This document shows, piece by piece, positions 310 through 15,000 of a DNA stretch of 64,000 bases. Location: NCBI RefSeq assembly GCF_000143415.4, contig NW_003314413.1, positions 124,001 to 188,000 on the forward strand, read 5' to 3'. The position numbers and the translations under genes are program-made. The notes under the pieces were generated by a model, which did not search any database, was not told the origin of the DNA, and worked only from the letters and a program-made list of their open reading frames with translations. Position 1 is the first letter of the stretch. Each line of letters begins with the position of its first letter. Source of the stretch: Selaginella moellendorffii. Lineage: Eukaryota > Plantae > Lycopodiophyta.

Positions 310-1125
310 CTAGAACCCTAAAACTTCTTTCTTGCGAGCGTTTCGAAACGCGCAGCAGCCCACGGAATAGACGATCACCAGGAAGAAGAACATCACCGCG
401 CTCACGAACGCGACCTTGCGCCAGTCGCGCTTGATGTTCTCGAGCACTCCCGCCTTGCAGGAACCGCAGTCCAGGCACAGATCCTCCTGGTTCCACCGCG
501 AGCAATCCGGGTCGGAATTAGGGTTCTGGGGATCCGCCCAGCTTGTGGCGTTAGCGAAGCCACACGCCGCTGGAGGCCGGCAGCATCCAGACTGCAAAGG
601 GACTAGACACAATCAATCCAATTCGAGGAGATTGGGCCACACCTGCAATGGGGAGTAATTGGTGAATGTAGCTTCTTCCAGGCCGACGCAAACCCTCGCA
701 GCGATCAAGCAGCTCTTGATCTTTGCCCAATTTCCCGGATTCTTGACGCGATCTTGGAGCCAGGGCGAGTAATCCGTGAGCCTATACTCCTCGTAGCCCA
801 ATCCAGCCAGAGAATGCCTGGCACCGCCCCTGCTCGTCACCACAAACGCAAATGCCGTGAATGCCAGCAGCGCTAGGATGAGGAGCAGCATAACCAGGAG
901 ATAGATCCACAGCAGCCACGCGATCCGGAAGCAGCTGCCGATAAATCCCGCCAGGGACACGAGCAGGATGAAGAGCCCTAGCGCGATCACGGGAAACTGG
1001 AGGAATTTCACGCACGCCGTCTCGTGCCGGTGCGCAAGCCAAATTCCCGCCCCAATCACCGCCAGCGAGAGGATCATCGCCACAAAATTCAGGATCCCCG
1101 TGAGGTAGTTGCTCGTCAGACCCAT
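310..1125 (-). CDS. Tetraspanin (plant TET family), 2 exons: 1125-643 and 591-310, ~254 aa
   Basis: Starts MGLTSNYLTGILNF with four hydrophobic segments. Contains the plant tetraspanin EC2 signature SGCCRPP and CLDCGSCKAGVL..I..DWRKV. A 51-nt GT-AG intron (642-592) joins ...SPLQ to SGCC in frame. Confidence 0.93.
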
Positions 1126-1289
1126 CTGATCGATCGATCGATCGGGCTGGAATCGCCTAGAACACTCGCGTACGGAAGCGCGACAAAAATGCCCGGCCTT
1201 GGCATCTGCTGCTCCAGGCCAGCGCGCGTACGGACGGGGATAAGAATGGGCCACCATGTTTAATGAGCGTGACAAGGACCTGACGGGCG

Positions 1290-3590
1290 TCATCTGACCG
1301 TACAGAGGTTGGACATCACGACGTACGCCGAGGAGTGGCCATGGTTCGAGCTCCGGGATGTCCGTACACCCCGGTGTACGTCACCGTGGATGTGGCAAGC
1401 GCCCAAGAGGCTCATCCATTGAGCGGGAGATGGCCACATGGGCATGGTTTGAATGAGCTCCTCAACCTTATCAAGACGCCCGGCGCGGCCGAGAAGATCG
1501 ACGAGGCACCCGTAGTTGTCCTCCAGTGGCTCGATCGAGTAGTCCCCGATCATGAGATGGAACTGGTGGCGGGCCTCTCGGATCGATCCGGCATGCGCGC
1601 ATGCGAAGAGCACACAGGTGAAGCTTATCACATTCGGCGCCACGCCCTCTTGATCCATTCTTTGCAGTAGGCCCATCGATTCGCGCAGGTCACCCTGGTG
1701 AGCGTAGGCCCCGATGATCGCGTTCCAGGAGATGGAGTTCTTGCCCCGGATCTCCTCGAACGCGGCCCTCGCGCTGGCGAGGGCGCCGCAGCGATCATAC
1801 ATGTTGACTAGCGCGGTGCCCGGGATCACGCTGCTTGAGAGCCCCTTGGCGGCGATGGTGGCGTGGATCTTCCGCCCTTCTCGCAGGTCCTCGCACGCAT
1901 CCAGCGCGCTCACCAGCGTCAGCTGGTTGGGATGGATCCCTTGGAGCTCCATTCTACTCAGTAGCAGCAGGGCTTGATCACTGTGACCCTGGTGAGCGCA
2001 AGCAGTGATCATCGACGTCCACGGGATCACATCGTCCCTCCGCTCGTCGCCCATTTGATCGAATACTCTCCAGGCGCTCTCGATGCTACCGCAGTTGCCA
2101 TACATGTCAATGAGCGCCGTCTCCACGCTTTGGGACTCGTGGATTCTATTGCTCTGATATTCTTCGTGGATCCTCCTCCCTTCCTCGATCAATTCCGGCG
2201 CGTTTGAAACCGCCTCCAGCACGCTCAAGAACGCGATCTCGTCGGGCTTCGTCCCTTCCGCGTCCATTTGCTTGAAGATCTGGAGAGCTCTCCGGGGGAA
2301 TCCATGCTGGGCATACGCAGCGATCAGCGACGTCCACGACACGATCGTCCTGCACGGCAACGAATTGAAGACGCTCTCGGCATCGATCAAGCTCCCGCAT
2401 TTGCCATACATCGTCACCAGCGCATTGCTCAACCGGGTGGAGCTCTCGTCGATCACTCCACTGGCGGCGATCCTCTCGTGAATTCTCCTCCCATCCCCCA
2501 GGAACTCCGCGCTGGAGCAAGCGCTCAGCGCAGTCAAGAATGTGTTCTCCATCGCCCTCACGCCCTCGCAATCCATGAGCTTGAGCAAACGCAGCGCCTC
2601 CTTGGCCTTCCCATGCTGAGCATGAGCTCCAATCAGAATGCCCCACGTCACCCCGTTCCTGTACGGCATGCCCACGAATACCGCCATGGCCTCGTCCAGG
2701 CTGCCGCACCGCCCGTACATGCTCACCAGCGTGTTCCCGATTAGGGCTTCACGCTCGAGGCCGCGAGCGGCGAGGTCGCCATGGAGTTTCTTCACCGAAT
2801 CGATCGATTCGCAGGTTACAAGAGTGCTCAAGAACGTCGATCGATCGGGCGCCAGGCCCGCGGGTTCGATACGGTAATACAGCTCCAGCGCTAGATCTCC
2901 ACGGCCGTGAAGAGAATAGGCTGCGATCATCGCGTTCCAGGCGATAATATCCCTCTTTCTCATCCGGTCGAAGAGATCCCGAGCTCGATCGAGGCCGCCG
3001 CACCTGGCATACATGCTCACCAGCGCCGTGCCGAGATTTCCACTCAGATCGAACCCGCTTGCCTCGATCCGGGCGTGGAGGCGCTCGCCCCCGGCGAGAT
3101 CCATTGCCAGGGTGCAAGCGCCCAGGAGATTGATAAACGTGACATGGCTGGCCTTGACGCCGTGGAGATCCATGCTTCCGAGAAGATCCAGCGCCTCCCG
3201 CAAATGCCCATTCTCGGCATACGCAGTGACGAGAATGCTCCAGGAGAAGACGTTTGGATGCTCGATGGACTCAAATGCGGCAATGGCGTCGTCCAGAGCT
3301 TCGCATTTCCCGTACATTCTCACGAGGAGATTGCCGAGAATGGTGTCGCCGCCGGCGCCCGCGCTGTTGATCTGGGCGTGGAGGCGCTTGCCCTGCGGCA
3401 GATCTCTGGAGCTTGCGCAGGCGCGAAGGAGATCCATGTAGGTGGAGAAATCCGCCGCAGCTCCTCGTTCCTCGAGGCGATCCAGCCTCTCGCAAACATC
3501 ACTGTGGCTCGATTTCGCGGCTCCATCTCCATATCCAGCGCAAGAGCAGAAAAACCTTCTTGCTCTTCCCGAGACACGTCTTTGCAACAT
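1290..3590 (-). CDS. PLS-class pentatricopeptide repeat protein with partial E domain (organellar RNA editing factor type)
   Basis: Intronless ~766-aa ORF with repeated motifs (ALVSMYARCG, SWTSLIAAYAQHG, VSALDAC). It ends with YGCLVDLLGRAG...WMSLLGACHIHG...SAYVVMSN and has no DYW domain. First ATG is at 3590. Confidence 0.93.
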   Translation of the reverse strand: MLQRRVSGRARRFFCSCAGYGDGAAKSSHSDVCERLDRLEERGAAADFSTYMDLLRACASSRDLPQGKRLHAQINSAGAGGDTILGNLLVRMYGKCEALDDAIAAFESIEHPNVFSWSILVTAYAENGHLREALDLLGSMDLHGVKASHVTFINLLGACTLAMDLAGGERLHARIEASGFDLSGNLGTALVSMYARCGGLDRARDLFDRMRKRDIIAWNAMIAAYSLHGRGDLALELYYRIEPAGLAPDRSTFLSTLVTCESIDSVKKLHGDLAARGLEREALIGNTLVSMYGRCGSLDEAMAVFVGMPYRNGVTWGILIGAHAQHGKAKEALRLLKLMDCEGVRAMENTFLTALSACSSAEFLGDGRRIHERIAASGVIDESSTRLSNALVTMYGKCGSLIDAESVFNSLPCRTIVSWTSLIAAYAQHGFPRRALQIFKQMDAEGTKPDEIAFLSVLEAVSNAPELIEEGRRIHEEYQSNRIHESQSVETALIDMYGNCGSIESAWRVFDQMGDERRDDVIPWTSMITACAHQGHSDQALLLLSRMELQGIHPNQLTLVSALDACEDLREGRKIHATIAAKGLSSSVIPGTALVNMYDRCGALASARAAFEEIRGKNSISWNAIIGAYAHQGDLRESMGLLQRMDQEGVAPNVISFTCVLFACAHAGSIREARHQFHLMIGDYSIEPLEDNYGCLVDLLGRAGRLDKVEELIQTMPMWPSPAQWMSLLGACHIHGDVHRGVRTSRSSNHGHSSAYVVMSNLCTVR

Positions 3591-4265
3591 CAATCCATTG
3601 AGATCCTATGACCTTATCAGATTGAAAGTGAGAATCCCGCACTTCAATTTCTCTTGTTGTGGCCCCAGATATCGGAACCATTCAATGTTCTTGCAGTAGC
3701 CCATGCGGGAACAAATGATATGTCTTAGGACATAAAGCAGCTACCTTTGGGATCGCAAGTCAGCACCTCAGGTTGATTGAAAGTGAGAATCCCACACCTA
3801 TCCTCGCAGAACTTGGAGGCGGGGATTGATGAAAGTGTGGAAGTGCTAGCTCCGGCAGCAAAGCTTTGTACGATTCGTGCTGCCCGTAGGCTCGTTCTGA
3901 AAATGTTAAATAAAATATAAGACCTATTGGCTCGCAGGATACCTATGGGCCAGATAGACAATCGTAAAACTCATGTTATTCCTCTATGTTTCAAGCAGTT
4001 GTGTTTCCTGCTGGCTATATGATTCTTGATGAGGTGGATGAGTTTCGTGTGGTTTTTCTTGGTGATCATGCATGAAATTATTGAGTTCGATTATAATTAT
4101 TTGACGTAAAATAAAAAATAATGATTAAAAATGACCAATAAATTCTTAATTATCAAAATAAAATCCAAAATAAGCATCTTTCAAAGATGCAAATTGTCAT
4201 ATTGAAATTGACTTACCCAAAATAATGACACAATAAAACAAAATAATAATAATGAACATATACTG

Positions 4266-4273
4266 TATATAAA
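4266..4273 (+). promoter_or_regulatory. Putative TATA box of the Hog gene
   Basis: TATATAAA about 40 nt upstream of ATG 4313. The AT-rich context weakens the call. Confidence 0.4.
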
Positions 4274-4312
4274 GCATCTCCCTTCCAATAATTTCGTTAG
4301 ACAGTTTCAGAA

Positions 4313-5319
4313 ATGACTAAACTTTTTATTTATGTTTTTTTATTTCCTAGTATTTTTCCCTTCATTAATTCTCAAGTTGATCCATGTAAACATGATTCAG
4401 ATTGTATTTCAGGTTATCACTGCGATAATGCTAATTGTGTAAAAAACAAATCATGTTTTCCAGGTATAGTTCACTTTATCATATTCGTAGCTCTAAGTTT
4501 ATTACTAGGTGATGCTAGTTTAAAGCTTTCTAATGGTAAACGAAAACAAATAAAGGATATTTCAATTGGTGATAAGGTTTGTAAGATTAATCACTTAATT
4601 TTACTCTTAACTGTTGCAATTAGGTTGCAATCCGAAATAAAGATGGCAAAATAGATTATTCTGATATATATGCTTTTGGACATAAAGATATTGAGCCTTA
4701 TGAAGAATTTATTCATATTAATACTGAAAATAATAAGAGTATTGAGTTATCTAGTTTACATTTTATACCCATTAAAAGTAAGAATTTTTATTTACTATTT
4801 CATGCATCATATTCCTAATAATCCATTTTTAGATTCAAAATCAATACTATATAAGTATGCAAAGGATATTACTTTTGCAGATACATTATTAGTTTTGGAT
4901 GAGCAATCAGGAGAACTATTACCTAATAATATAACAGGTAAGTATTAATTTTAAGCTTTTTATTTTTTAATAATTCATCTATAGATATTTATATATCAAA
5001 AAAGTATGGCCTTTACAATCCATTTACATTGACTGGTGATTTAATTGTAAATGATATTGTAGTATCAACTCACAGTGATTGGTTTTTAGATGAGATATTT
5101 GAATATTTAAAACTAAGCTATTTATTACCTGATATATATCATGCTGTTTTATTTCCAATTCAATTACTATATAGATATTTAAATATTGATATTTATTTAA
5201 AATTATACAACTTAGTGGATACCATGCTTAATAATATTAGCTCTATTATGCTAGTTTCTGCTTTATCAATGTTTATTAAAAATAAAAGTAAAGATAATAA
5301 AATAATTAATAAAAAATAA
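4313..5319 (+). CDS. Secreted Hog (Hedgehog/intein Hint + SRR-like) domain protein; 5 exons 4313-4463, 4509-4576, 4624-4777, 4833-4937, 4985-5319; 270 aa
   Basis: Four GT-AG introns of 45, 47, 55 and 47 nt give an 813-nt open frame. The protein is a signal peptide, then QVDPCKHDSDCISGYHCDNANCVKNKS, then CFPGDASLKLSNGKRKQIKDISIGDKV (Hint block A), YSDIYAFGH, ELSSLHFI (block B S/TxxH), YAKDI, GLYNPFTLTGDLIVNDIVVSTH (Hedgehog-type C-terminal Hint motif) and YHAVLFPIQLLY (SRR-like). Confidence 0.85.
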
Positions 5320-5396
5320 AACAGAAATAATGAAATAATTCTAATTAATATTTAACTTTTAAATGGTAATTTCTTAGTATAGATTAGAAAAATATT

Positions 5397-5398
<2 letters not shown>

Positions 5399-5453
<55 letters not shown>

Positions 5454-5538
5454 TTATATATATGTATATATGTATGTTTATATGTATGTATGTATGTATA
5501 TGTATGTATATATGTATGTTTATATGTATGTATGTATG

Positions 5539-5570
<32 letters not shown>

Positions 5571-5638
5571 TATGTATGTATGTATGTATATGTATGTATG
5601 TATATATGTATATATGTGTATATGTATATATGTGTATA
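5399..5638. repeat. Compound microsatellite (TA)n followed by (TATG)n-like units, running into an assembly gap
   Basis: Directly visible. Confidence 0.97.
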
Positions 5639-5738
5639 NNNNNNNNNNNNNNNNNNNNNNNNNNNNNNNNNNNNNNNNNNNNNNNNNNNNNNNNNNNNNN
5701 NNNNNNNNNNNNNNNNNNNNNNNNNNNNNNNNNNNNNN
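5639..5738. other. Assembly gap (100 N)
   Basis: Run of N. Confidence 1.
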
Positions 5739-6929
5739 AATAAAAGAAGAAAATATTTATGACAAGAAAAATACGGTGGCATATAGGTACATCTTTCTTA
5801 CTTACTTTTTCCATCCATATGTTATTGTGGCAGAACTCCCATAATCTTGATCAGCTCTCTTCTTAGAATAGCAAAATCTTGCACCCTACTTTCAATTTTA
5901 CTATTGCATATCCCCTAAGATTTAGCATCATCACAATGCCATGACTTCAATATGCAGCATTTGATTCCAGGAAAAAACAAAACAAAACCATTCAAACGTC
6001 ATATGCATGTTAATGCCCAAGATGCATTCAAAGATTATTTGGTGAGTCATATAGTGTGTTTAAACAATTCAAACACATGTGTTTTAAATTGATTTTATCT
6101 TGCAGTATAATTGATTTATAGTGTGTTATTTATATCCAAATGAACCCTGCAACTTCACACATACACACTCTACATAGTAGATTCCCATTGGTTTAAACTG
6201 ATTTTCACTTGCCACAAGTACTGAACGCCCAAATATATTCCAGCAATCTCTTAGCAGGAATATACTAAGGATCCAATGGCCATTTCATGGTCATCCAATA
6301 AGATGGGATGGTTGGAATCATAGCCCATACATGCTATTGACATCCATGCCTTTGATTTAGGTTGTTTGGTCAATCATGTTTGTGGACTTCTTTAGCAGTT
6401 GCAATCCCTTTCATAAGTGCATTAACATAGGTGTCAAAAGACATAAAAATGCTGTTTGGATTGTCACTGATTTGTAGTTTTGTGATATAAATAGTCTTTC
6501 TCATTATATTCTTAAATACTTTTAATAGTACTCTCTCTCTATTCATCAAGTAGATATTGAGGAACTCCAAAGTCTCTATCTATTGCTTGTATAGAAGCCT
6601 TAATTTTGTAATGTTGTAAATTATATTATTTGGAGTTTTGTTCACTACCAAACTAGCATATGTGTAATTGAGAAAAATGAAGTGCTCAATATAAAATTTA
6701 TATTCATGAGCAAAAATTTCTGTTATAGTCTTTAACCATTCCTTTGGACTGTAATTATTTATAATGCATATTAGTTTTTTCAACTTTAAAGACTTTACAT
6801 ACTAAACTTTGTGCTTAATTTATACAAAGTTAGCCAAGAACCCTTCCTAACATTTAGAGGCACAACTTCATATACATCTTTCTTGATCTTCAAAACATTT
6901 CTATAAACAAAAACAATAAAAAATGACAC

Positions 6930-7650
6930 TATATCTAAATGTTTTCCCATAATTATATACGTTATCCAAATCTCATTCTATGATCACTAAATCTACCAAT
7001 CTTTCTATTATAAAATCTCATTCCATAATTATATATGTTATCTAAATATCATCCTATGATCATTAATTCTACGAATCTTTCGATTATGAAATCTCATCCC
7101 ATGATCACATGTGTTATTTAAATCTCATTCTATAATCTATAAATCTATCTATTGTGTATATTAACTTTTTGATGTGAGGCAACTAATCCCAGAAGGGATA
7201 TTTTATTGCTAGAACTTTTCGGATAACTCAATGGTAAAAGTTTCATTTTTTAACCCCCTTTATTAAATATTAGTTGGATTTCATGCCCTTTTCTTTTGTG
7301 AGGCTCTCTAGCTCTATGAAAAAAGGTATAATCATCATATTGCAACTACTTTTGGTTTGCTTAAATACATTTGTTTGTGGATTGAGCATACTCCTTTTGG
7401 TTTGCTTGGATACTTTTGTCCATAAATTGAGCATACTTTTTTTGGTTTGCTTGGATACCTTTGCCTGTGGATGAATGCTCAATACATATCATTTCAAATT
7501 TAAGGGTAGAAATATATCTACTTAAAGGTATATAATGGATGCTTGATGAGAGAGCCTTTAGTAGTTATTTTATCCCTATTTATCCTTTAAGGTTTTAAGG
7601 ATTCACGGTGACAGTATATCTAAATCTCATCCCATGATCACATGTGCTAC
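6930..7650. repeat. AT-rich dispersed repeat with internal tandem units (AAATCTCATyCyATGATCAC; ~42-nt TACTyyTTTTGGTTTGCTT units); inverted homolog at ~62050-62700
   Basis: 7550-7640 (TAGTAGTTATTTTATCCCTATTTATCC...GGATTCACGGTGACAGTATATCTAAATCTCATCCCATGATCAC) matches the reverse complement of ~62105-62135 and ~62520-62575. Confidence 0.7.
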
Positions 7651-10600
7651 ACACTCCCACTCTCAACTATTCAAGTCAGAGTTTTTAGTCCAAATATGTT
7701 ACACTCGTTCACTTTGGCCATTACCACGTGGCTTAGGGATATGTGTTTCACAACTCCACCACCCATGGATAAAGTTTGATGTCCTCATTGAATAATAAAC
7801 CATTTTATAAAGTAACCCCATAATGGATTACCACTTTTTATCCTTAGCACCCAGCTAATATTTGTCAATGGTTTGACACTGAAGGCTCACCATGCCTTGT
7901 CCACATAATCTTCTTAACTTAGAGACTCATTAGACCACTTATGGTGGTCCTTCCCCTTATATTTGTTTAGTTCATGCTAAATTCATTAAAGACACCTTCT
8001 CTCTTTCAATTTTACTATTCATTTAGGAGTAGTTTTGGCTTTTACTAACATAACCATCACACTCTAAAACTTTAATATTGACATCTTATATCAATTTCTT
8101 AAGTGTGTTCGACACTTTGCATTGCACCGGTTATGCAAATCCCATTTCCCCATCTTATTCTTCACTAGAGGGCATTATCATCCTCTCTTTTAACCTTTGG
8201 AACTAAATTTCACTTACCCATAATTCATGCTAGGGTTATCCATGGCCCTATCATTTGGTTACTTTACTACTCCATCTCTTTTAAAATTTTTCCTTCTCTA
8301 AATTGAAGCATTTAGAAATCCATATTTAAAAATATTTTTCCCCTCCCACAATCTGTTAACATTGACCACATGGGTGTTCCTTGCCTAATTTGTCATTTGG
8401 ATTCCTTTCAATAATTTATATGACCTAATCTTGGCCATTAGTCTTTTGCTCATATGCTTTGTTGCACTAGGCAACATAAAATCACTACTTCCATCCTTGA
8501 GATATCCTTTTGATTCCATAACAAAAGCTCTATTTTGCCAAGTCTAAGAGGTGTTTACCCCTAGTAAGTCTCTTTAATATTTTCTACTATAGGCTCTATC
8601 CATAACCCAACTTTGCGACCCACCCATGGGTCCTTCTTTAGAGACTATTTTCTTAAACTCACAATACTATTGCATCGTCGTAGTTCATTTTCCTTAAGTG
8701 TGCTTTTTTAGTCACCTTGACCAAGCCACACCATTACCAATAGTTCAAATTAACACTTTGAACTAGGAATTTTATTCCTTAACCTCACAAGGACTTTATC
8801 CTTGTTTAGCCGTAAGATCATCCAATGATCTAATCTTGACACATTAACAAGTTTGTTAATAGATATTAGGTTTACCAAACCTTTAAGTTGTTAACCATGA
8901 CCCCGGGGGCATCCCTTACACTTGGTGGTGCACCCAAGCCAGCCCTTCTAACTAAGGGTTCATAGCAATTGAGATTAGGTGTCCTTATCTCATTCACTAC
9001 GTCTTTGGTGCCACTTGCAGTAAAGTGTTTAAGTTAGATATGTTGAGCTTTCACACTAAGCAATCTAATGATGCATCACAACTTTAGGGCATCCCTCACT
9101 TGGCGATGTGCTTAAGCTAGTTTCCTTATTAAGAGTTTATGACCACCGAAAAATGAATGTCCTCATATTCCAAACCATCACCATGCTTTAGTGAGTTGGG
9201 ATTTGAACTCAAGCACTAAAGGGTTGAGACTTGAACCCAACCTCCGTATATACATCTATGGATGGCATCACCCAAGATGCCTGGCATGACTCCCCATGCT
9301 AGTGCACTAACTTATACCCAAAGGGCACTACAGATCACAATTTAGGAACTTAGTTCCTCTAAATTACCAAGTCCTGTCATTTAACAAGTTTATGATCATG
9401 CATGAGTTCCTCCATACTTGACCTCATAAGCCACCCCTTTTGAAGTCAACACTTTCAACTAGTGTTTTTGTTTCCTCAATTTGCCAATCTCGTTTAGTAA
9501 TGAAAACCAACTAATCCCTAACCTTGATAGCCTCACCTCATGACAAATTTCAAGACCACGTTTTTGCTATACCATTCTGATTTCGTACGTTCCTATAAAT
9601 CATTTACACTTGTCTTTCTAGGTACTAATTTATCTCGAATCATTTTTAGGAACATTGAAAGGACCCTATCCTTTAGCTTGCCAAGACTCCTCTTTTTGCA
9701 AGCTTTTCAACTACCATAAGTTCTAACATGGCAATTTCCCACTTTAGACTCTTTATGGCTCTATGATTACCAATAGCACCACCTTCGAGCATCCACTTGA
9801 TTATCCACTCCTCAACTTGTATAATCACTCTTAGTTATGCCCTTCAATTTCTATGATTTGGTTCTATCCGCTTTAGCAAATATTCTTAAGGATGAACCTA
9901 TCCAATGGCATAGGGAGTGGTTCCTTAATCTAGATATGCTCACTTTATAATCCCACACACTAAGATCAATATTACTACTTATAGGATTTTGTATGCCCAT
10001 CACTAACCTAGCTAAAATCTTTTTTGGCTTTGTTCACTTTTTGATGGATAAACTTCTCCTATTTTTAGCTTTTTGCCATTTTGGATGTTAGATAATACCT
10101 TATATCCATTATTCTTTAGGGACTTAATTCATAGGGCCTTATTTAATGCCCTTATGATACTAAATACCACTTCCTAGGTGTTCAAGAGTGCTTAGGTGTC
10201 TCAGTGATAGACTTATTTGACAATGATCATTTCCTTTTATAACCTTGATTCACTATATTACAACATAAACAATTTATCCCCCGAATGATATATTTATCTT
10301 CCTTCTTATCCCAATAAAAGGTCTTGGGAAGTTGACTTCCAATCAATTATGCCATATATTTTGCTTAGTTACTTTATAGTTATCAGCTAGTGCTTTCACA
10401 CTTCCATCATTATTTGGGTCCACACAATTGAATTATATGCCTTCCCGCTTATGCTATGCCAATTTTAGTTCTATTGAGATTTCTTTGGCAAAAGGTTCTC
10501 ATAAACCAACCAACTTGATTTTAAGGCCTCATCCCTTAAGACACTTGGGGTCTCCACCCTATCTGCTCCACGAGCCTACTTTCACGACACTTTCCATTTG

Positions 10601-12097
10601 TGTCTAGGTCTTTGCTAAGACTAAAGCAGTCATTTCTTATACCAACTATTAGTTAGCATTACACCATAGTGTTTACACACAAACTCTATGCCAAAGTTGT
10701 TTTCTTCTGGGAATACCTTTCCCATAACTTTAGTATAATATATTATGTTATCAATGAAATACCCACTGTTCTCATAATCCTCCTCATCTTTCGTAGGGTA
10801 CAACACACCTCAATCCAAATGTTTCCATCAATCTTTTAATATCATTCCTTGACTTCACTTGAGTCTTTCAGGTTTTTGGACTTTGCTAATATAACGACCC
10901 ATAAGATCTTAGCCTCATGGCTAGTTTTGATGTGCTAGTTCTTTTGGAATATTACTTCTTGTATTCATGTCCTACTCACAAAGACCATATTTGCAAATAT
11001 TAATTTGACACTTGATTATTCTTTGTTTTATGTGGGCTACCTTTACCTCTTAGGACTATCTGTTCATATGATAAAATATCAAGTCATCCTCTAAGTACAC
11101 CCCCAACTCCTTGAGCTATTCTAACATTTATAGGTAGTGCCGACTACCATTTCAAGGACTTATGTTTTCATTTGTATTTAACCTCCTACAATCACCAACT
11201 TTAATGTTAAATTCTTGAGCACCATCCTCAACTATAAGAGGATAACTTTATAACTCCTTTATTGTTTAGGAGTTTCCATTATTCCCATGATCTAACTGTA
11301 GTTGTTTATCACAACCACATTAGCTAATTTGCTAAGTCAAACACTTATATGGATTATATCCTCAACTCTTAAAAAAAACTTTCTATTATTCCCAAGATCC
11401 CAAATTCGTGGACCTTTTCTATTCACCATATTGCTAACATGTTCACATATGAACTAAGGTGGAGAGTCATGCCCTCTTGATATGCTATTCCTCGAGGAAG
11501 ACCCACTCATAGAACCTTTCAATGTTAATATCAAGTGGTGATATACTTAACTATCAATAAGAGTTAGACTAAGGAATGGCTTTAATACCAAATTGTAAGT
11601 GACTAAATTTTCCATTCTACTTTAATCACTTAACCACACTTTTGACCACTTTGAGGAGTCTCACTCACAACCTCCATAAGTTTTACTCTAGACTTGGGGA
11701 CTTGCTAGCCAAATAAATGGCATTTATGCCACTTATCTTTTGCTCTTGGTCTAAGTGCTCCACATGTTTGATCCTATGATCGACACCTAAATGTTCCACT
11801 AGCATATCAGCCCATTACACTAATGTCATGCCCATTCACCTTTGTCACCCTAGTGGTCCAAAACCAACTACATCACAAACCCATTTTTTAAAGACTAGGC
11901 CATTAGTCTATGAGTGGTCATCTTATGATCACACTTTAGCATCCTTAGGATGCTAGAAGACATGAGAAATACCTTTCCCTAATGTCCTTTCTTTAGTTCC
12001 CACTAAATCTCCATCCACGGCCGTTCTCACCAACACTGCCATTGGGTCAAGGCCTGAAGGCCCAACCACTAAGTCCCACCGACATTTGGGACTTCCT
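7650..12097 (-). mobile_element. Old, CpG-decayed copy (A) of the gypsy-derived non-coding LTR family: 3' LTR remnant ~7650-7752, internal region 7753-11593, 5' LTR part 11594-12097 (interrupted by copy B)
   Basis: Colinear with 19400-24090 but with many C>T/G>A changes. A degenerate tRNA-Met PBS lies at ~11579-11590, and the LTR boundary TGTAAGTGACTAA starts at 11594. Confidence 0.85.
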
Positions 12098-15000
12098 TGT
12101 GAGACACAAAATCCCTAGGCCCCAAAGTGGAGCCACAAGGGTGCCATGTGGTAATGGCCGAAGTGAAAGCCAAATAAGCATAACATGTTTGGACTAAAAG
12201 TTTTGACTTGAAAGGTCGAGAGCGGGAGTGGAACTCCCAACGAAGTGCTCGAGGAACAAGCACGAAGCAAGCAATAAGTAAGTCTCTAGAAAAGGGATAT
12301 AGGAGGACCAACATATGATACATAGAGGAATTCGAGATGGACCCAAGATAGACCTGAGATGGAGTCCGAGATGGCGTTCGAGATGGACCCGAGATGGACC
12401 TAAGATGGAGTCCGAGATGGACCCGAGATGGAGTTCGAGATGGACCCAAGATGGAGTCTGAGATGGAGTCTGAGATGGACCTGAGATGGAGTTCAAGATG
12501 GAGTCCAAGATGGACCCGAGATAAAGTTCGAGATGGACCCGAGATGGAGTCTGAAATGGAGTTCGAGATGGACCAGAGATGGAGTCCGAGATGGAACTGA
12601 GACCGAGATCGAGTCCAAGTCCGAAACCAGACCGAGTCCGAGTCCGAGTCCGAGTTCAAGTCTGAGTCCAAGTCTGAACACTAATATAGGCTATTGGGTG
12701 AAATCCCAAAGGGATTGTCCCCTTGGGGGGGGGGGGGGGGGGTTGCAGGGGGTCCAAAAGTATAGTAAGGAGAGTATAGGGGTTGGAGCCCACTAATGGA
12801 GCCAATTTGGCCATGAAAGGCTAGTTTGGCCTAGGAATGCTATACCCAAGTGTTGGGGGATGAGCTAACCACTGGGAAGTCCAAGACTAGAGTGAATACG
12901 AACCAACAAGTGGGGTAGTTTGGTGAAATGTTCAAGAGCCAGCTCCAGTTCCCCTGGGAGATCGAATAGTCAATGCTCCCAGTCCAAGTATGGGTGGCAC
13001 TACCACCTTGGATACCTGGTGTGGCTCAACGGAACCTCGCTCTAAGCCCATGGTTAGAGCACCCAAAGGCAGAAGGTAGAGAGAGTACCCAAGAGGCTCG
13101 CGTAGGGCCACATTGTTCCGAAATGTTGTCCCAAAGTCTCAGACTATGGAAAGTAAGAGGAGTAGTCCTTTGGTATAGAGACCAAGGATACGGTCATGTG
13201 AGGAAGAAGTCCCAAAGGACTGTGGGACTTAGTGGTCGGATTTATGGGCCTTGATCCAGTGGCAATGTTGGCAAACATGGCTATGGACAGAAAGAGACTT
13301 GGTGGGGACCGGAAAAGGGATATTGGGGAAGGCTATTCCCCATGCATGCGGGCATCCTAAGGATGCTAAAGAATAAATCTAGGATGATCATTCATGGAAT
13401 GGATGGCCCAATTTTTAAGAAATGGGACTGTGATGCAAGTGGTGTTAAACCACCGGTGTGAGCAAAGTGAAAGGGCATGGCCTTAGCGTAATGGGCTGAT
13501 ATGTCAGTGGTACTTTGGGGTGTCGATCATGGGATCAGACATGTGGAGCACTTGGACCAAATGCAAAGTTTGAGTGGTAGGGATGCCATTCTCAGGGCTA
13601 CCAAGCCCAAGTCTGGAGTGAGACTCCTCCAAGTGGTCGGAGGTGTGGTTAAGTGATTAAAGTAGAATAGAAAAATTAGTTGCTTACAAATTGGTATCGG
13701 AGCTGTTCTTTAGTCTGACTTTTATTGGTGCTCAAGTATATCACCACTTGTATTGGCATTGAAAGGTCCGAGAAGTGGGTTTATCCTTGAGGAGTAGCAG
13801 GTCGGGAAGATATGGCTCTTCACTACAGTTTATGTGTGAACTTGTAGGTGAGGTGGTGGATAGAAAAGGGCCAATAATGGAATGACTTTGGGATCTAGGG
13901 AACAGTATAAAGTTTTCTTCAAAAAGTTGAGGATGTGATTCAGATGAATGTTTGACTTAGTAAATTGGCTAATGTAATTGTGGTAAACAACTATAGTTGG
14001 GATCACGGGAAAAATAAAAACTCCAAAACAATAAAGGAGTTACAAGATTATCCTCATATAGTTGAGGCTGGTGCTCATGAATTTAAGATTGGAATTGATA
14101 ACCATGAAAGATCAAGTATAGATGAGGACACAGGTCCTTGAAATGGTAGCCAAGGCTACCTTTTATAAATGCTGGAACAAACCCAAGGAGTTAGGGGTGT
14201 GCTAAGAAGATGAGTTGGTATTTTCATCATATGGAGAGATAGTCCTAAAGGGCAAAGATAGCTCACAGAGAACAAAAAATAATAAAGTGTTGGAAGTAAC
14301 ATTTGGAAAGATGGTCCTTATGAGTAGGACATAAATACACAAAGTTGTATTTTAGCGAGCTAACACCTCAAAAATAGGACCTTACAAGTCAGTGGATTAG
14401 CAAAGCTCAAAAATGTTGGATGACTCGAGTAAAGTCAAGGAATGGTTCTAAAGGATTGGTAAAAACATTTGGACTAAGATGTGTTGTGCCCCACGAAGGT
14501 TGGAGAGGATCATAAGATCCAAATATGAGAACAGTGAATATCTAATTGATGGCAGAATATACTATACTAAAGTTGTGGGGAAGGTGTTCTCAGAAGAAAA
14601 CAACTTTGACACAAAATTATGTGTAAAGGAGTGTGGTGACCCAGATAATAATGGAGGTGTGGAAGCACCAGTAATGAGTTGTAAAACTTGACAACTATGA
14701 GGGAATTAAGCAAAAGGTGCAAAATAATCGGTTAAACTAGTAGAAGGTAACTACCTAAAACTTTTTAATGGCATAAGGAAGTTATATATACCCTTATGAG
14801 GGATAAATTGTTTATGTTGCGATATAATAAGTCAATGTCATAAAAGGGAATGCTCATTGTCAAACATGCCATCATTGGGACACCCAAACACTCTAAAACA
14901 CCAGGAGGTGGTGTTTGGTGTCGCGAGGGCAATAGATAAGGCCCAAGGGACTAAGTCCTTAACGAATAATGGATAGAAGGTGTTATCCAAACGTCCAAGG

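What the first reader, a model, noticed from the sequence alone, without database searches (positions are those of the whole stretch)
4313..5319. Hedgehog-type self-cleaving Hog protein in a plant: a secreted 4-Cys micropeptide fused to a Hint domain and a sterol-recognition-like helix
Seen in sequence: removing four tiny GT-AG introns joins three unremarkable ORF-track pieces into one 270-aa frame. Its architecture is signal peptide, 27-aa Cys-rich peptide, S|CFPG Hint domain with SxxH block B and GLYNPFTLTGDLIVNDIVVS, then YHAVLFPIQLLY and a hydrophobic tail. Established: in Hedgehog, the Hint Cys1 and TxxH drive an N-S acyl shift, and the SRR (HxAFAPxRL-like helix) supplies cholesterol, which is attached to the released N-fragment. 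Seed plants lack Hedgehog signalling. As I recall, Hog genes have been noted sporadically in non-animal eukaryotes, including early-diverging plants and a glomeromycete fungus, mostly without functional data. Inference: the locus may make a self-released, possibly sterol-anchored extracellular peptide, a lipid-modification route not described for plant peptides.
Basis: partly seen in the sequence, partly recalled or inferred. Interest (0 to 1): 0.9.

Follow-up and report, generated by a model that had tools for sequence, protein, structure and literature searches.

The report
Unannotated AT-rich spikemoss Hog gene
This is a real, intact but unannotated and apparently silent spikemoss gene that joins a tiny secreted four-cysteine peptide to a Hedgehog-type self-cleaving domain; it is one more, oddly AT-rich, copy of a plant gene family published in 2008 whose chemistry nobody has tested.

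Summary
Removing four GT-AG introns (45, 47, 55 and 47 nt) from 4313-5319 gives one 270-aa frame. It reads signal peptide, 27-aa four-Cys peptide, S|CFPG Hint module, SRR-like helices, hydrophobic tail.

A family profile built without this protein scores it at 224 bits. Three of the four introns sit where an annotated Selaginella moellendorffii paralogue has them. An independent DNA run carries the gene joined to the GC-rich PPR neighbour at normal depth, so it is native DNA.

It is not a new kind of gene. Buerglin (2008) described Hog proteins from this species, and about 17 paralogues are annotated ("warthog protein 4/6", Hint PF01079), two with a similar four-Cys cargo. This scan has already reported other unannotated, AT-rich, silent Hog copies elsewhere in this genome.

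Three things are particular to this locus:
- It is absent from the protein collections searched.
- Its composition is extreme: GC3 is 13%, against 47% in a paralogue and 74% in the neighbouring gene.
- The conserved catalytic residues are all kept despite that drift.

No RNA read covered it, so the splice junctions, self-cleavage and any sterol adduct remain untested.

The parts
4266..4273 (+). TATA-like box (TATATAAA) 40-47 nt upstream of the ATG; a possible core promoter
   Evidence: Read directly in the sequence. This is inference only; no transcript start was seen.
4313..4463 (+). Exon 1: start codon, signal peptide (codons 1-20, 4313-4372), 27-aa four-Cys cargo Q21-S47 (4373-4453), catalytic Cys48 (4454-4456) and F-P-G(1st base)
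   Evidence: 4313 is the first start codon after a stop. Hydropathy reaches 2.27 over residues 4-18.
4464..4508 (+). Intron 1, 45 nt, GT..AG, phase 1, splitting the Gly codon of CFPG
   Evidence: The annotated paralogue P0151 has an intron at the same position and phase.
4509..4576 (+). Exon 2 (G51-K73: ...DASLKLSNGKRKQIKDISIGDK)
4577..4623 (+). Intron 2, 47 nt, GT..AG, phase 0, after IGDK
   Evidence: P0151 has an intron at the same position; there it is a GC-AG intron.
4624..4777 (+). Exon 3: holds His93 (4681-4683, at the place of Hedgehog Asp303) and block B S116-S-L-H119 (4750-4761)
   Evidence: Pfam Hint PF01079 E 7e-5, profile positions 43-86. Aligns to PDB 6TYY. Coordinates.
4778..4832 (+). 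Intron 3, 55 nt, GT..AG, phase 1; it holds an in-frame stop if retained; P0151 has no intron here
   Evidence: The alignment runs across the junction without a gap.
4833..4937 (+). Exon 4 (N125...T159)
4938..4984 (+). Intron 4, 47 nt, GT..AG, phase 1
   Evidence: P0151 has an intron at the same position and phase.
4985..5319 (+). Exon 5: end of the Hint module (GLYNPFTL..., motif J S187-T188-H189-S190 at 5065-5076), SRR/ARR-like region with motif K helix Y211-Y222 (5137-5172), hydrophobic tail N243-I257 (5233-5277), Lys-rich end, stop at 5317-5319
   Evidence: Pfam Hint E 1.6e-4, profile positions 133-161. 345 relatives at E<=1e-3..
5345..5638 (.). (TA)n/(TATG)n microsatellite that ends the contig piece at the 100-N gap (5639-5738); it bounds the locus downstream

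Best explanation
The locus is a native, intact, five-exon nuclear gene of the spikemoss Selaginella moellendorffii. Gene annotation missed it. It is a divergent, very AT-rich paralogue of the land-plant Hog family (Hint module plus SRR/ARR-like helices).

Most likely mode of action, by homology with Hedgehog C-terminal domains:
1. The signal peptide (residues 1-20) takes the precursor into the ER.
2. Cys48 attacks the Ser47 carbonyl (N-to-S acyl shift), helped by Ser116/His119.
3. The resulting thioester is resolved by a second nucleophile: a sterol hydroxyl activated by His93, or water.
4. This frees the 27-aa, two-disulfide peptide Q21-S47 into the secretory path.
5. The Hog part probably stays behind on its hydrophobic C-terminal tail.

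Shown here: the gene structure (by homology), family membership, conserved catalytic residues, and native genomic context.
Inferred: secretion, cleavage, and the nature of the adduct.
Not shown: any transcription.

My odds: Hog-family coding gene 0.95; still functional or expressed somewhere 0.5; cleaves itself if made 0.7; adduct is a sterol 0.25.
For: The spliced frame is 270 aa.

Family membership:
- Pfam Hint hits two exon pieces in collinear profile positions, 22.9 and 21.8 bits.
- BLASTP gives 1e-57 to PF01079 proteins.
- A family profile built without this protein scores it at 224 bits, covering profile positions 2-204 of 211.
- 32 of 41 family positions conserved at 80% or more are kept, including every 100%-conserved one: C48, G71, H93, H119, G168, N171.

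Native origin:
- Introns 1, 2 and 4 are at the same positions and phases as in annotated paralogue P0151.
- A 2201-nt contig from an independent DNA run spans 2486-4680 across the GC/AT switch, at the depth of the flanks. It has no indel or stop in the gene.
- The neighbours are a PPR gene and a tetraspanin gene.
- An AU test does not reject a clade with the Selaginella paralogues (p 0.84).

Fold and chemistry:
- The predicted structure of the paralogue matches the Drosophila Hedgehog Hint domain (TM 0.86, E 2e-13).
- His at the Asp303 position is nearly invariant in the family. The engineered D303H Hedgehog keeps sterol ligation (PMC9163320).
Against: Expression: no RNA read lay on 4137-5638 in three RNA runs. 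About 12% of each run was read, and the neighbouring genes had depth 1-10. Fifteen RNA contig sets hold none of its sampled words.

Genomic setting: the locus is CpG-depleted (o/e 0.40) and borders a CpG-poor, AT-rich, repeat-bearing block. That looks like silenced chromatin.

Departures from Hedgehog and from its own family:
- Cys400/C143 of Hedgehog is Thr188.
- The motif K Arg (92% conserved in the family) is Gln219.
- The family's FGxxxGG stretch before the tail is missing.

Coverage: the last 97 codons (5028-5319) were not covered by the independent DNA contigs.

No plant Hog has ever been assayed; nothing was found.
Confidence: 0.8

Rival explanations
1. Silent relic: the copy is a Hog paralogue that has been switched off in methylated, AT-drifting chromatin. 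It no longer does anything, and its open frame is left over from past selection.
For: There are zero RNA reads while the neighbours are expressed, and none of its sampled words in 15 RNA contig sets. The gene is unannotated. CpG o/e is 0.40 with a TG/CA excess. GC3 is 13%. It carries R219Q and lacks a family motif before the tail. Between the reference and run X1 there are 2 replacement and 2 silent differences, which shows no sign of constraint.
Against: At 24% GC a 270-codon frame stays open by chance with p about 1e-11. All four splice-site pairs, the start codon and all invariant catalytic residues are intact, and most substitutions at conserved sites are conservative V/L-to-I. So the AT drift happened under protein-level selection. 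The RNA sampled was limited: three runs from one study, a fraction of each read, tissues unknown.
Confidence: 0.35
2. Self-cleaving protease only: the Hog domain releases the peptide by hydrolysis, or hands it to a non-sterol nucleophile. No sterol-anchored peptide is made.
For: Hedgehog Cys400/C143 is Thr here; a 2025 paper's title (seen, not read) says it forms a branched intermediate. The motif K Arg is Gln219. Buerglin named such regions ARR (adduct recognition region) because the adduct of non-Hedgehog Hogs is unknown. The SRR-like part is only about 30-40% like other plant Hogs.
Against: The family keeps a long helical region after the Hint module, with a motif K-like Y-x-x-x-L-x-P helix. 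His at position 303 supports sterol ligation in engineered Hedgehog, with a wider sterol range.
Confidence: 0.45
3. Foreign or misassembled DNA: the AT-rich gene comes from a contaminant (nematode, fungus, protist) or a recent horizontal transfer, joined to plant DNA by the assembler.
For: GC drops from about 58% to 23% within about 200 bp. A scaffold gap lies 320 bp downstream of the stop codon. The gene is a long branch with odd amino-acid composition in the tree.
Against: One contig of an independent DNA run crosses the GC switch and reaches into the gene at the same depth as the flanks. Three intron positions and phases are shared with a native paralogue. The nearest relatives are land-plant Hogs: Selaginella, Diphasiastrum, Ceratodon, Adiantum. 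The AU test favours a Selaginella clade. A 51-nt intron in the neighbouring gene is spliced in RNA, so tiny introns are native here.
Confidence: 0.03

Closest known systems
Selaginella moellendorffii 'warthog protein 6' (P0151, 265 aa; tandem pair on GL377597.1) and SELMODRAFT_446381 (P0023)
   Same: Same species and same layout: signal peptide, about 27-30-aa four-Cys peptide (C-x5-C-x9-C-x4-C versus C-x5-C-x5-C-x4-C here, alignable), G/S|CFPG, Hint, SRR-like helices, hydrophobic tail. Three shared intron positions. Both cargoes give Pfam Nodulin_late as the best hit, below its cut-off.
   Different: Only about 40% identical. Those genes have CDS GC 47%, are annotated, and earlier scan notes call them transcribed. 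This one has GC 24%, an extra intron and a 4-residue insert (RNKDGKID) that the short Selaginella clade lacks. It has no FGxxYGG motif, has a Lys-rich end, and no RNA was seen.
pSm Hog / pPp Hog of Buerglin 2008 (BMC Genomics 9:127; ESTs DN839649, DN837769; P. patens JGI 232119)
   Same: The published plant Hog family: CFPGDA, SDIYAFGHKD, GLYNPFTL, HSxWFLD, a motif K helix, the motif J Cys replaced, a hydrophobic C-terminus.
   Different: pSm Hog has almost no cargo (signal peptide, then ..NTS|C). pPp Hog has a cargo of about 240 aa. This locus was not among those described.
Hedgehog C-terminal autoprocessing domain (Drosophila Hh-C, PDB 1AT0; D303H variant 6TYY)
   Same: Hint fold (shown on the paralogue model: TM 0.86, rmsd 2.1 A). 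Cys1 nucleophile, T/SxxH, and a helical region after the Hint module.
   Different: There is no Hedge signalling domain. The general base Asp303 is naturally His93. Cys400/C143 is Thr188. The motif K Arg is Gln. There is an extra hydrophobic tail. Activity is unknown.
Nematode Hog proteins (warthog, groundhog, quahog) and Glomus GmGIN1
   Same: A Hog domain behind an unrelated, often Cys-rich secreted N-terminal domain; the adduct is unknown.
   Different: The N-terminal domains are different. RefSeq's name 'warthog' for the Selaginella genes reflects the Hog domain only; no Wart domain is present.
Nodule-specific Cys-rich (NCR) / late nodulin peptides, Pfam PF07127
   Same: Signal peptide plus a short peptide with C-x5-C ... 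C-x4-C spacing.
   Different: The scores (17.0 here, 23.6 for P0151) are below the cut-off of 30.4. NCRs are free-standing legume peptides without a Hint domain. This is a resemblance only.

Membership tests
Hog proteins (Hint module PF01079 + SRR/ARR; Buerglin 2008) | Sequence-profile match to the Hint module | tested here: met
   Exon 3 and exon 5 pieces hit PF01079 at 22.9 and 21.8 bits, in collinear profile positions 43-86 and 133-161. Each piece alone is under the 29.7-bit cut-off. The whole spliced protein scores 224 bits against a profile of 75 family members built without it. BLASTP gives 1e-57 to proteins carrying PF01079. The whole spliced protein could not be given to Pfam because it has no reference.
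Hog proteins (Hint module PF01079 + SRR/ARR; Buerglin 2008) | Catalytic Cys as first residue of the Hint module (motif A, CF..) | tested here: met
   Cys48 in S47|C-F-P-G; this column is 100% conserved in the family alignment.
Hog proteins (Hint module PF01079 + SRR/ARR; Buerglin 2008) | Block B T/S-x-x-H | tested here: met
   S116-S-L-H119 aligns with T-P-A-H of Drosophila Hh. The His is 100% conserved in the family.
Hog proteins (Hint module PF01079 + SRR/ARR; Buerglin 2008) | Motif J and an SRR/ARR region with motif K after the Hint module | tested here: met
   Motif J is VVSTHSDWFLD, with the Cys replaced by Thr as reported for plant Hogs. Motif K is the helix YHAVLFPIQLLY, which keeps Y211 and P217 but has Q219 for Arg.
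Hog proteins (Hint module PF01079 + SRR/ARR; Buerglin 2008) | Hint fold | tested here: inconclusive
   Only the annotated paralogue P0151 (40% identical) was folded: pLDDT 84, best PDB matches 6TYY/1AT0 at TM 0.86. The spliced protein of this locus has no reference, so it was not folded.
Hog proteins (Hint module PF01079 + SRR/ARR; Buerglin 2008) | Autocatalytic cleavage at the residue before Cys1 | not testable with these tools
   This needs a recombinant precursor and a cleavage assay.
Hedgehog proper (Hedge + Hog, cholesterol-modified morphogen) | N-terminal Hedge signalling domain | tested here: not met
   The cargo is a 27-aa four-Cys peptide. Exon 1 gave no Hedge hit in Pfam.
Hedgehog proper (Hedge + Hog, cholesterol-modified morphogen) | Asp303 general base and Cys400 (C143) | tested here: not met
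   His93 aligns with position 46/303, matching the engineered D303H structure 6TYY. Thr188 stands at the Cys400 place.
Hedgehog proper (Hedge + Hog, cholesterol-modified morphogen) | Sterol esterified to the released N-fragment | not testable with these tools
Late nodulin / NCR peptides (PF07127) | Profile match at or above the curated cut-off | tested here: not met
   17.0 bits against a cut-off of 30.4; the paralogue scores 23.6 bits.
Expressed, spliced gene | RNA reads across the four junctions | tested here: not met
   No reads lay on 4137-5638 in three RNA-seq runs, while a 51-nt intron of the neighbouring tetraspanin gene was seen spliced in 11 reads. No RNA contig set holds the sequence. 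Absence in these samples does not prove the gene is silent.

The most novel reading that the evidence does not exclude
This gene, together with the other unannotated AT-rich copies noted elsewhere in the genome, forms a hidden Hog subfamily. It would be expressed only in unsampled conditions (reproductive structures, gametophytes, infection). Its natural His general base would esterify a phytosterol onto a defence-type four-Cys peptide. That would be a sterol-peptide conjugation route in plants, using in nature the same Asp-to-His swap that widens sterol tolerance in engineered Hedgehog.
Probability: 0.1. Interest if true: 0.8.

Novelty: new member of a known kind. Interest (0 to 1): 0.3.

Why it matters
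The locus adds a missed gene to a plant family that has the Hedgehog self-cleaving domain but no known function. It also shows that annotation pipelines overlook very AT-rich, tiny-intron, unexpressed copies in this genome.

The family as a whole is the interesting object. Its Hog domains sit behind small secreted Cys-rich modules: four-Cys peptides here, and hevein chitin-binding domains in relatives. They also carry, naturally, the His general base that broadens sterol use in engineered Hedgehog. If any member attaches a phytosterol to its cargo, that would be a new lipid modification of plant peptides.

This copy, being silent in the data at hand, is not the best member on which to test that.

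Full report
**What is in the sequence**

The region 3900-5800 was read and its ORFs listed. Joining 4313-4463, 4509-4576, 4624-4777, 4833-4937 and 4985-5319 removes four GT..AG introns of 45, 47, 55 and 47 nt. The result is an 813-nt frame of 270 codons plus a stop.

The ATG at 4313 is the first start codon after an upstream stop. A TATATAAA lies 40-47 nt before it.

The protein reads, in order:
- a hydrophobic N-terminus, residues 1-20;
- Q21-S47, with Cys25/31/37/42;
- S47|C48-F-P-G;
- ...IGDKVA...YSDIYAFGH93KD...ELS116SLH119FIP...YKYAKD...;
- G168LYNPFTLTGDLIVNDIVVS187-T188-HSDWFLD;
- ...LPDIY211HAVLFPIQLLY222...;
- a hydrophobic stretch, 243-257, and a Lys-rich end.

**Is it more than chance?**

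At the local base composition (A 0.36, T 0.40) a random 270-codon frame stays open with p about 1.6e-11.

Pfam's Hint module PF01079 hits the exon 3 piece (E 7e-5, profile 43-86) and the exon 5 piece (E 1.6e-4, profile 133-161) independently and in the right order.

The spliced protein, used locally, gives BLASTP E-values down to 1e-57 against proteins that carry PF01079. The matches are collinear over residues 41-242, that is across all four junctions. A profile built from 75 family members without this protein scores it at 224 bits in one stretch, profile 2-204 of 211. The best of 200 shuffles scores 3.8 bits.

Retaining intron 3 would bring an in-frame stop. So homology strongly supports the splice model.

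**Which genome, and is the DNA native?**

An earlier scan note names the genome as Selaginella moellendorffii. In agreement, the closest annotated relatives are proteins of that species. The neighbours are a 767-aa PPR protein (1290-3593, minus strand) and a tetraspanin (310-1293, minus strand).

The gene is compositionally alien to its surroundings. GC falls from about 58% to 23% between 3900 and 4100, and a 100-N gap follows a microsatellite at 5639. I therefore tested contamination and misassembly.
- In an independent DNA run (X1), one 2201-nt contig spans 2486-4680 across the switch, at word depth 243, like the flanks. A second contig covers 4653-5027.
- Within the gene this sample differs at 4322 (L4F), 4441 (silent), 4647 (silent), 4899 (D147G) and two intron sites. 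There is no indel or stop.
- The last 97 codons were not covered.
- A 51-nt intron in the tetraspanin gene is spliced in RNA reads, so introns of this size are normal here.

The DNA is native.

**What family**

Buerglin (2008, PMC2362128) described Hog proteins (Hint plus SRR/ARR) from S. moellendorffii (ESTs DN839649, DN837769), S. lepidophylla and Physcomitrella. He noted motifs J and K, and replacement of the motif J cysteine.

A search with a full-length relative returned 20 proteins. Seventeen are annotated S. moellendorffii entries named 'warthog protein 4/6' or 'Hint domain-containing protein', and 16 of these carry PF01079. Other named relatives come from the lycophyte Diphasiastrum, the moss Ceratodon and the fern Adiantum.

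The exhaustive representative search with the exon 5 piece found 345 relatives at E<=1e-3, but none above 55% identity. The two word-indexed searches found no entry for this protein either. So the gene is missing from the collections searched.

**Relationship to the paralogues**

The locus of P0151 ('warthog protein 6', a tandem pair next to a PPR gene) has introns after CFP-G (phase 1), after IGDK (phase 0) and before the [ED]IS..GLYNP exon (phase 1). These match introns 1, 2 and 4 here. Intron 3 is extra in this gene.

P0151 and P0023 also carry a signal peptide and a four-Cys peptide in front of CFPG. P0151's spacing, C-x5-C-x9-C-x4-C, aligns with C-x5-C-x5-C-x4-C here.

In the tree this protein is a long branch (1.05) in the land-plant half, unresolved and flagged for odd composition. 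Forcing it together with the ten Selaginella rows gives a better likelihood (by 13.3; p-AU 0.84). Forcing it with the two four-Cys rows is not rejected either (p-AU 0.55). It keeps a 4-residue insert (RNKDGKID) that the short Selaginella clade has lost, so it is probably an early offshoot within the Selaginella expansion.

**Catalytic anatomy**

| Position here | Equivalent in Drosophila Hedgehog | Status |
|---|---|---|
| Cys48 | Cys258 | kept |
| Ser116..His119 | Thr326..His329 | kept (Ser for Thr) |
| His93 | Asp303, the general base | replaced by His |
| Thr188 | Cys400 (C143) | replaced by Thr |
| Gln219 | motif K Arg (92% conserved in the family) | replaced by Gln |

The exon 3 piece in fact aligns best to PDB 6TYY, the engineered D303H variant. 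That variant keeps its structure and its sterol-ligating activity, and accepts a wider range of sterols (PMC9163320). The His is nearly invariant in the plant family.

Of 41 family positions conserved at 80% or more, 32 are kept here, including all 100% ones. Five of the nine departures are V/L-to-I. The family's FGxxYGG stretch before the tail is absent.

The paralogue P0151 folds with pLDDT 84 into a beta-rich module followed by six helices. Its best PDB matches are 6TYY and 1AT0 (TM 0.86, rmsd 2.1 A), ahead of BIL domains and inteins. The spliced protein of this locus could not be folded, because it has no reference.

**Expression**

Fifteen RNA contig sets of the species hold none of the sampled words. 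Three raw RNA-seq runs (about 9 million reads each, 12% of each run) gave no read on 4137-5638, while the tetraspanin and PPR genes had depth 1-10. The four junctions are therefore unconfirmed by RNA. The gene is silent, or very low, in what was sampled.

**The odd composition**

| Measure | This gene | Comparison |
|---|---|---|
| CDS GC | 24% | P0151: 47% |
| GC3 | 13% | P0151: 47%; PPR gene 720 bp away: 74% |
| Intron GC | 23% | P0151: 35% |
| F/Y/M/I/N/K share of residues | 43% | nine relatives: 19-28% |
| G/A/R/P share of residues | 11% | nine relatives: 22-34% |
| CpG o/e | 0.40 | 5739-12000: 0.20; PPR gene: 1.10 |

TG and CA are in excess where CpG is depleted. This is the signature of long-term cytosine methylation and deamination. 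It fits a silenced block that starts at the gene's promoter and continues into repeat-bearing DNA without long ORFs.

Yet the frame, the splice sites and the catalytic residues survived, so the drift took place under selection on the protein. I have no tested explanation for how a gene can be both so constrained and so silent. Expression limited to unsampled stages is the obvious candidate.

**Mechanism proposed**

By homology:
1. The precursor enters the ER.
2. The signal peptide is removed near S20|Q21.
3. Cys48 makes an N-to-S acyl shift at Ser47.
4. A second nucleophile resolves the thioester.
5. The 27-aa two-disulfide peptide is released.
6. The Hog part remains on its hydrophobic tail.

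Whether the nucleophile is a sterol is open. His93 and the helical region speak for it; Thr188 and Gln219 speak against a strictly Hedgehog-like course.

The cargo resembles small defence-type Cys-rich peptides. Pfam Nodulin_late is the top hit, below its cut-off, for both this gene and P0151. Relatives carry a hevein chitin-binding module (38.1 bits, above the cut-off) or a Stig1-like region directly before CFPG. That suggests a family habit of delivering small secreted Cys-rich modules, but it is only a lead.

**Comparison and verdict**

It works like a Hedgehog C-terminal domain and is a member of the Hog family. It is not a Hedgehog, because it has no Hedge domain and the Asp303 and Cys400 equivalents are not met.

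The family has been known in this species since 2008 and is annotated. The library searched holds no functional study of a plant Hog.

Earlier notes of this scan report the same kind of gene on other DNA of this genome, including annotated four-Cys members and several unannotated, very AT-rich, silent five-exon copies. I could not reach their sequences, so I cannot say whether they form one subfamily with this gene.

Verdict: a real feature and a new member of a known kind, of modest interest in itself. The open question is the adduct and role of plant Hog precursors, and that is better tested on an expressed paralogue.

Noticed in passing
window 310-1293 (-): Tetraspanin gene (PF00335, 87 bits) in two ORF pieces. 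Its 51-nt intron at 592-642 is seen spliced in 11 RNA reads, which shows that introns of about 50 nt are normally processed in this genome.
   Followed up: partly
window 1290-3593 (-): 767-aa PPR protein ORF (PF01535, 242 bits), GC3 74%. Six RNA reads show a joint that goes back 294 nt (3213 to 2920) with 9 extra letters. The DNA contigs also break around 2945-3008. The expressed allele, or a paralogue, may differ in repeat number from the reference.
   Followed up: no
window 5739-12000: About 6 kb of 25-37% GC DNA with no ORF of 90 aa or more, CpG o/e about 0.2, strongly negative GC skew, and short tandem arrays (76 nt x3 at 6937-7164; 45 nt x3 at 7345-7479). It looks like old methylated repeat DNA.
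   Followed up: partly
window 12310-12668: Array with 23/12-nt periodicity (GAGATGGAGTCC/GAGATGGACCC units), 13 overlapping copies, inside a 200-aa minus-strand ORF that is probably an artefact of the repeat.
   Followed up: no
L001 1019-1990 and 3001-3969: The annotated four-Cys Hog gene P0151 sits in a tandem pair (about 95-97% identical in the Hog exons), also next to a PPR gene. Its second intron starts with GC (a GC-AG intron).
   Followed up: partly
P0012, P0164 (unnamed Logan contigs, about 1 kb): Relatives in which a hevein-type chitin-binding domain (PF00187: P0012 38.1 bits, above the 27.8 cut-off; P0164 27.6 bits, just below it) is fused directly in front of S|CFPG of the Hog domain. 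In the tree they sit near the fern Adiantum.
   Followed up: partly
window 364-1127: Many single-base differences appear in the RNA runs but not in DNA run X1 (for example 364 G>A, 553 A>G, 733 T>C, 1016 G>A). These are most simply strain or haplotype differences between samples, not editing. They were not resolved.
   Followed up: no
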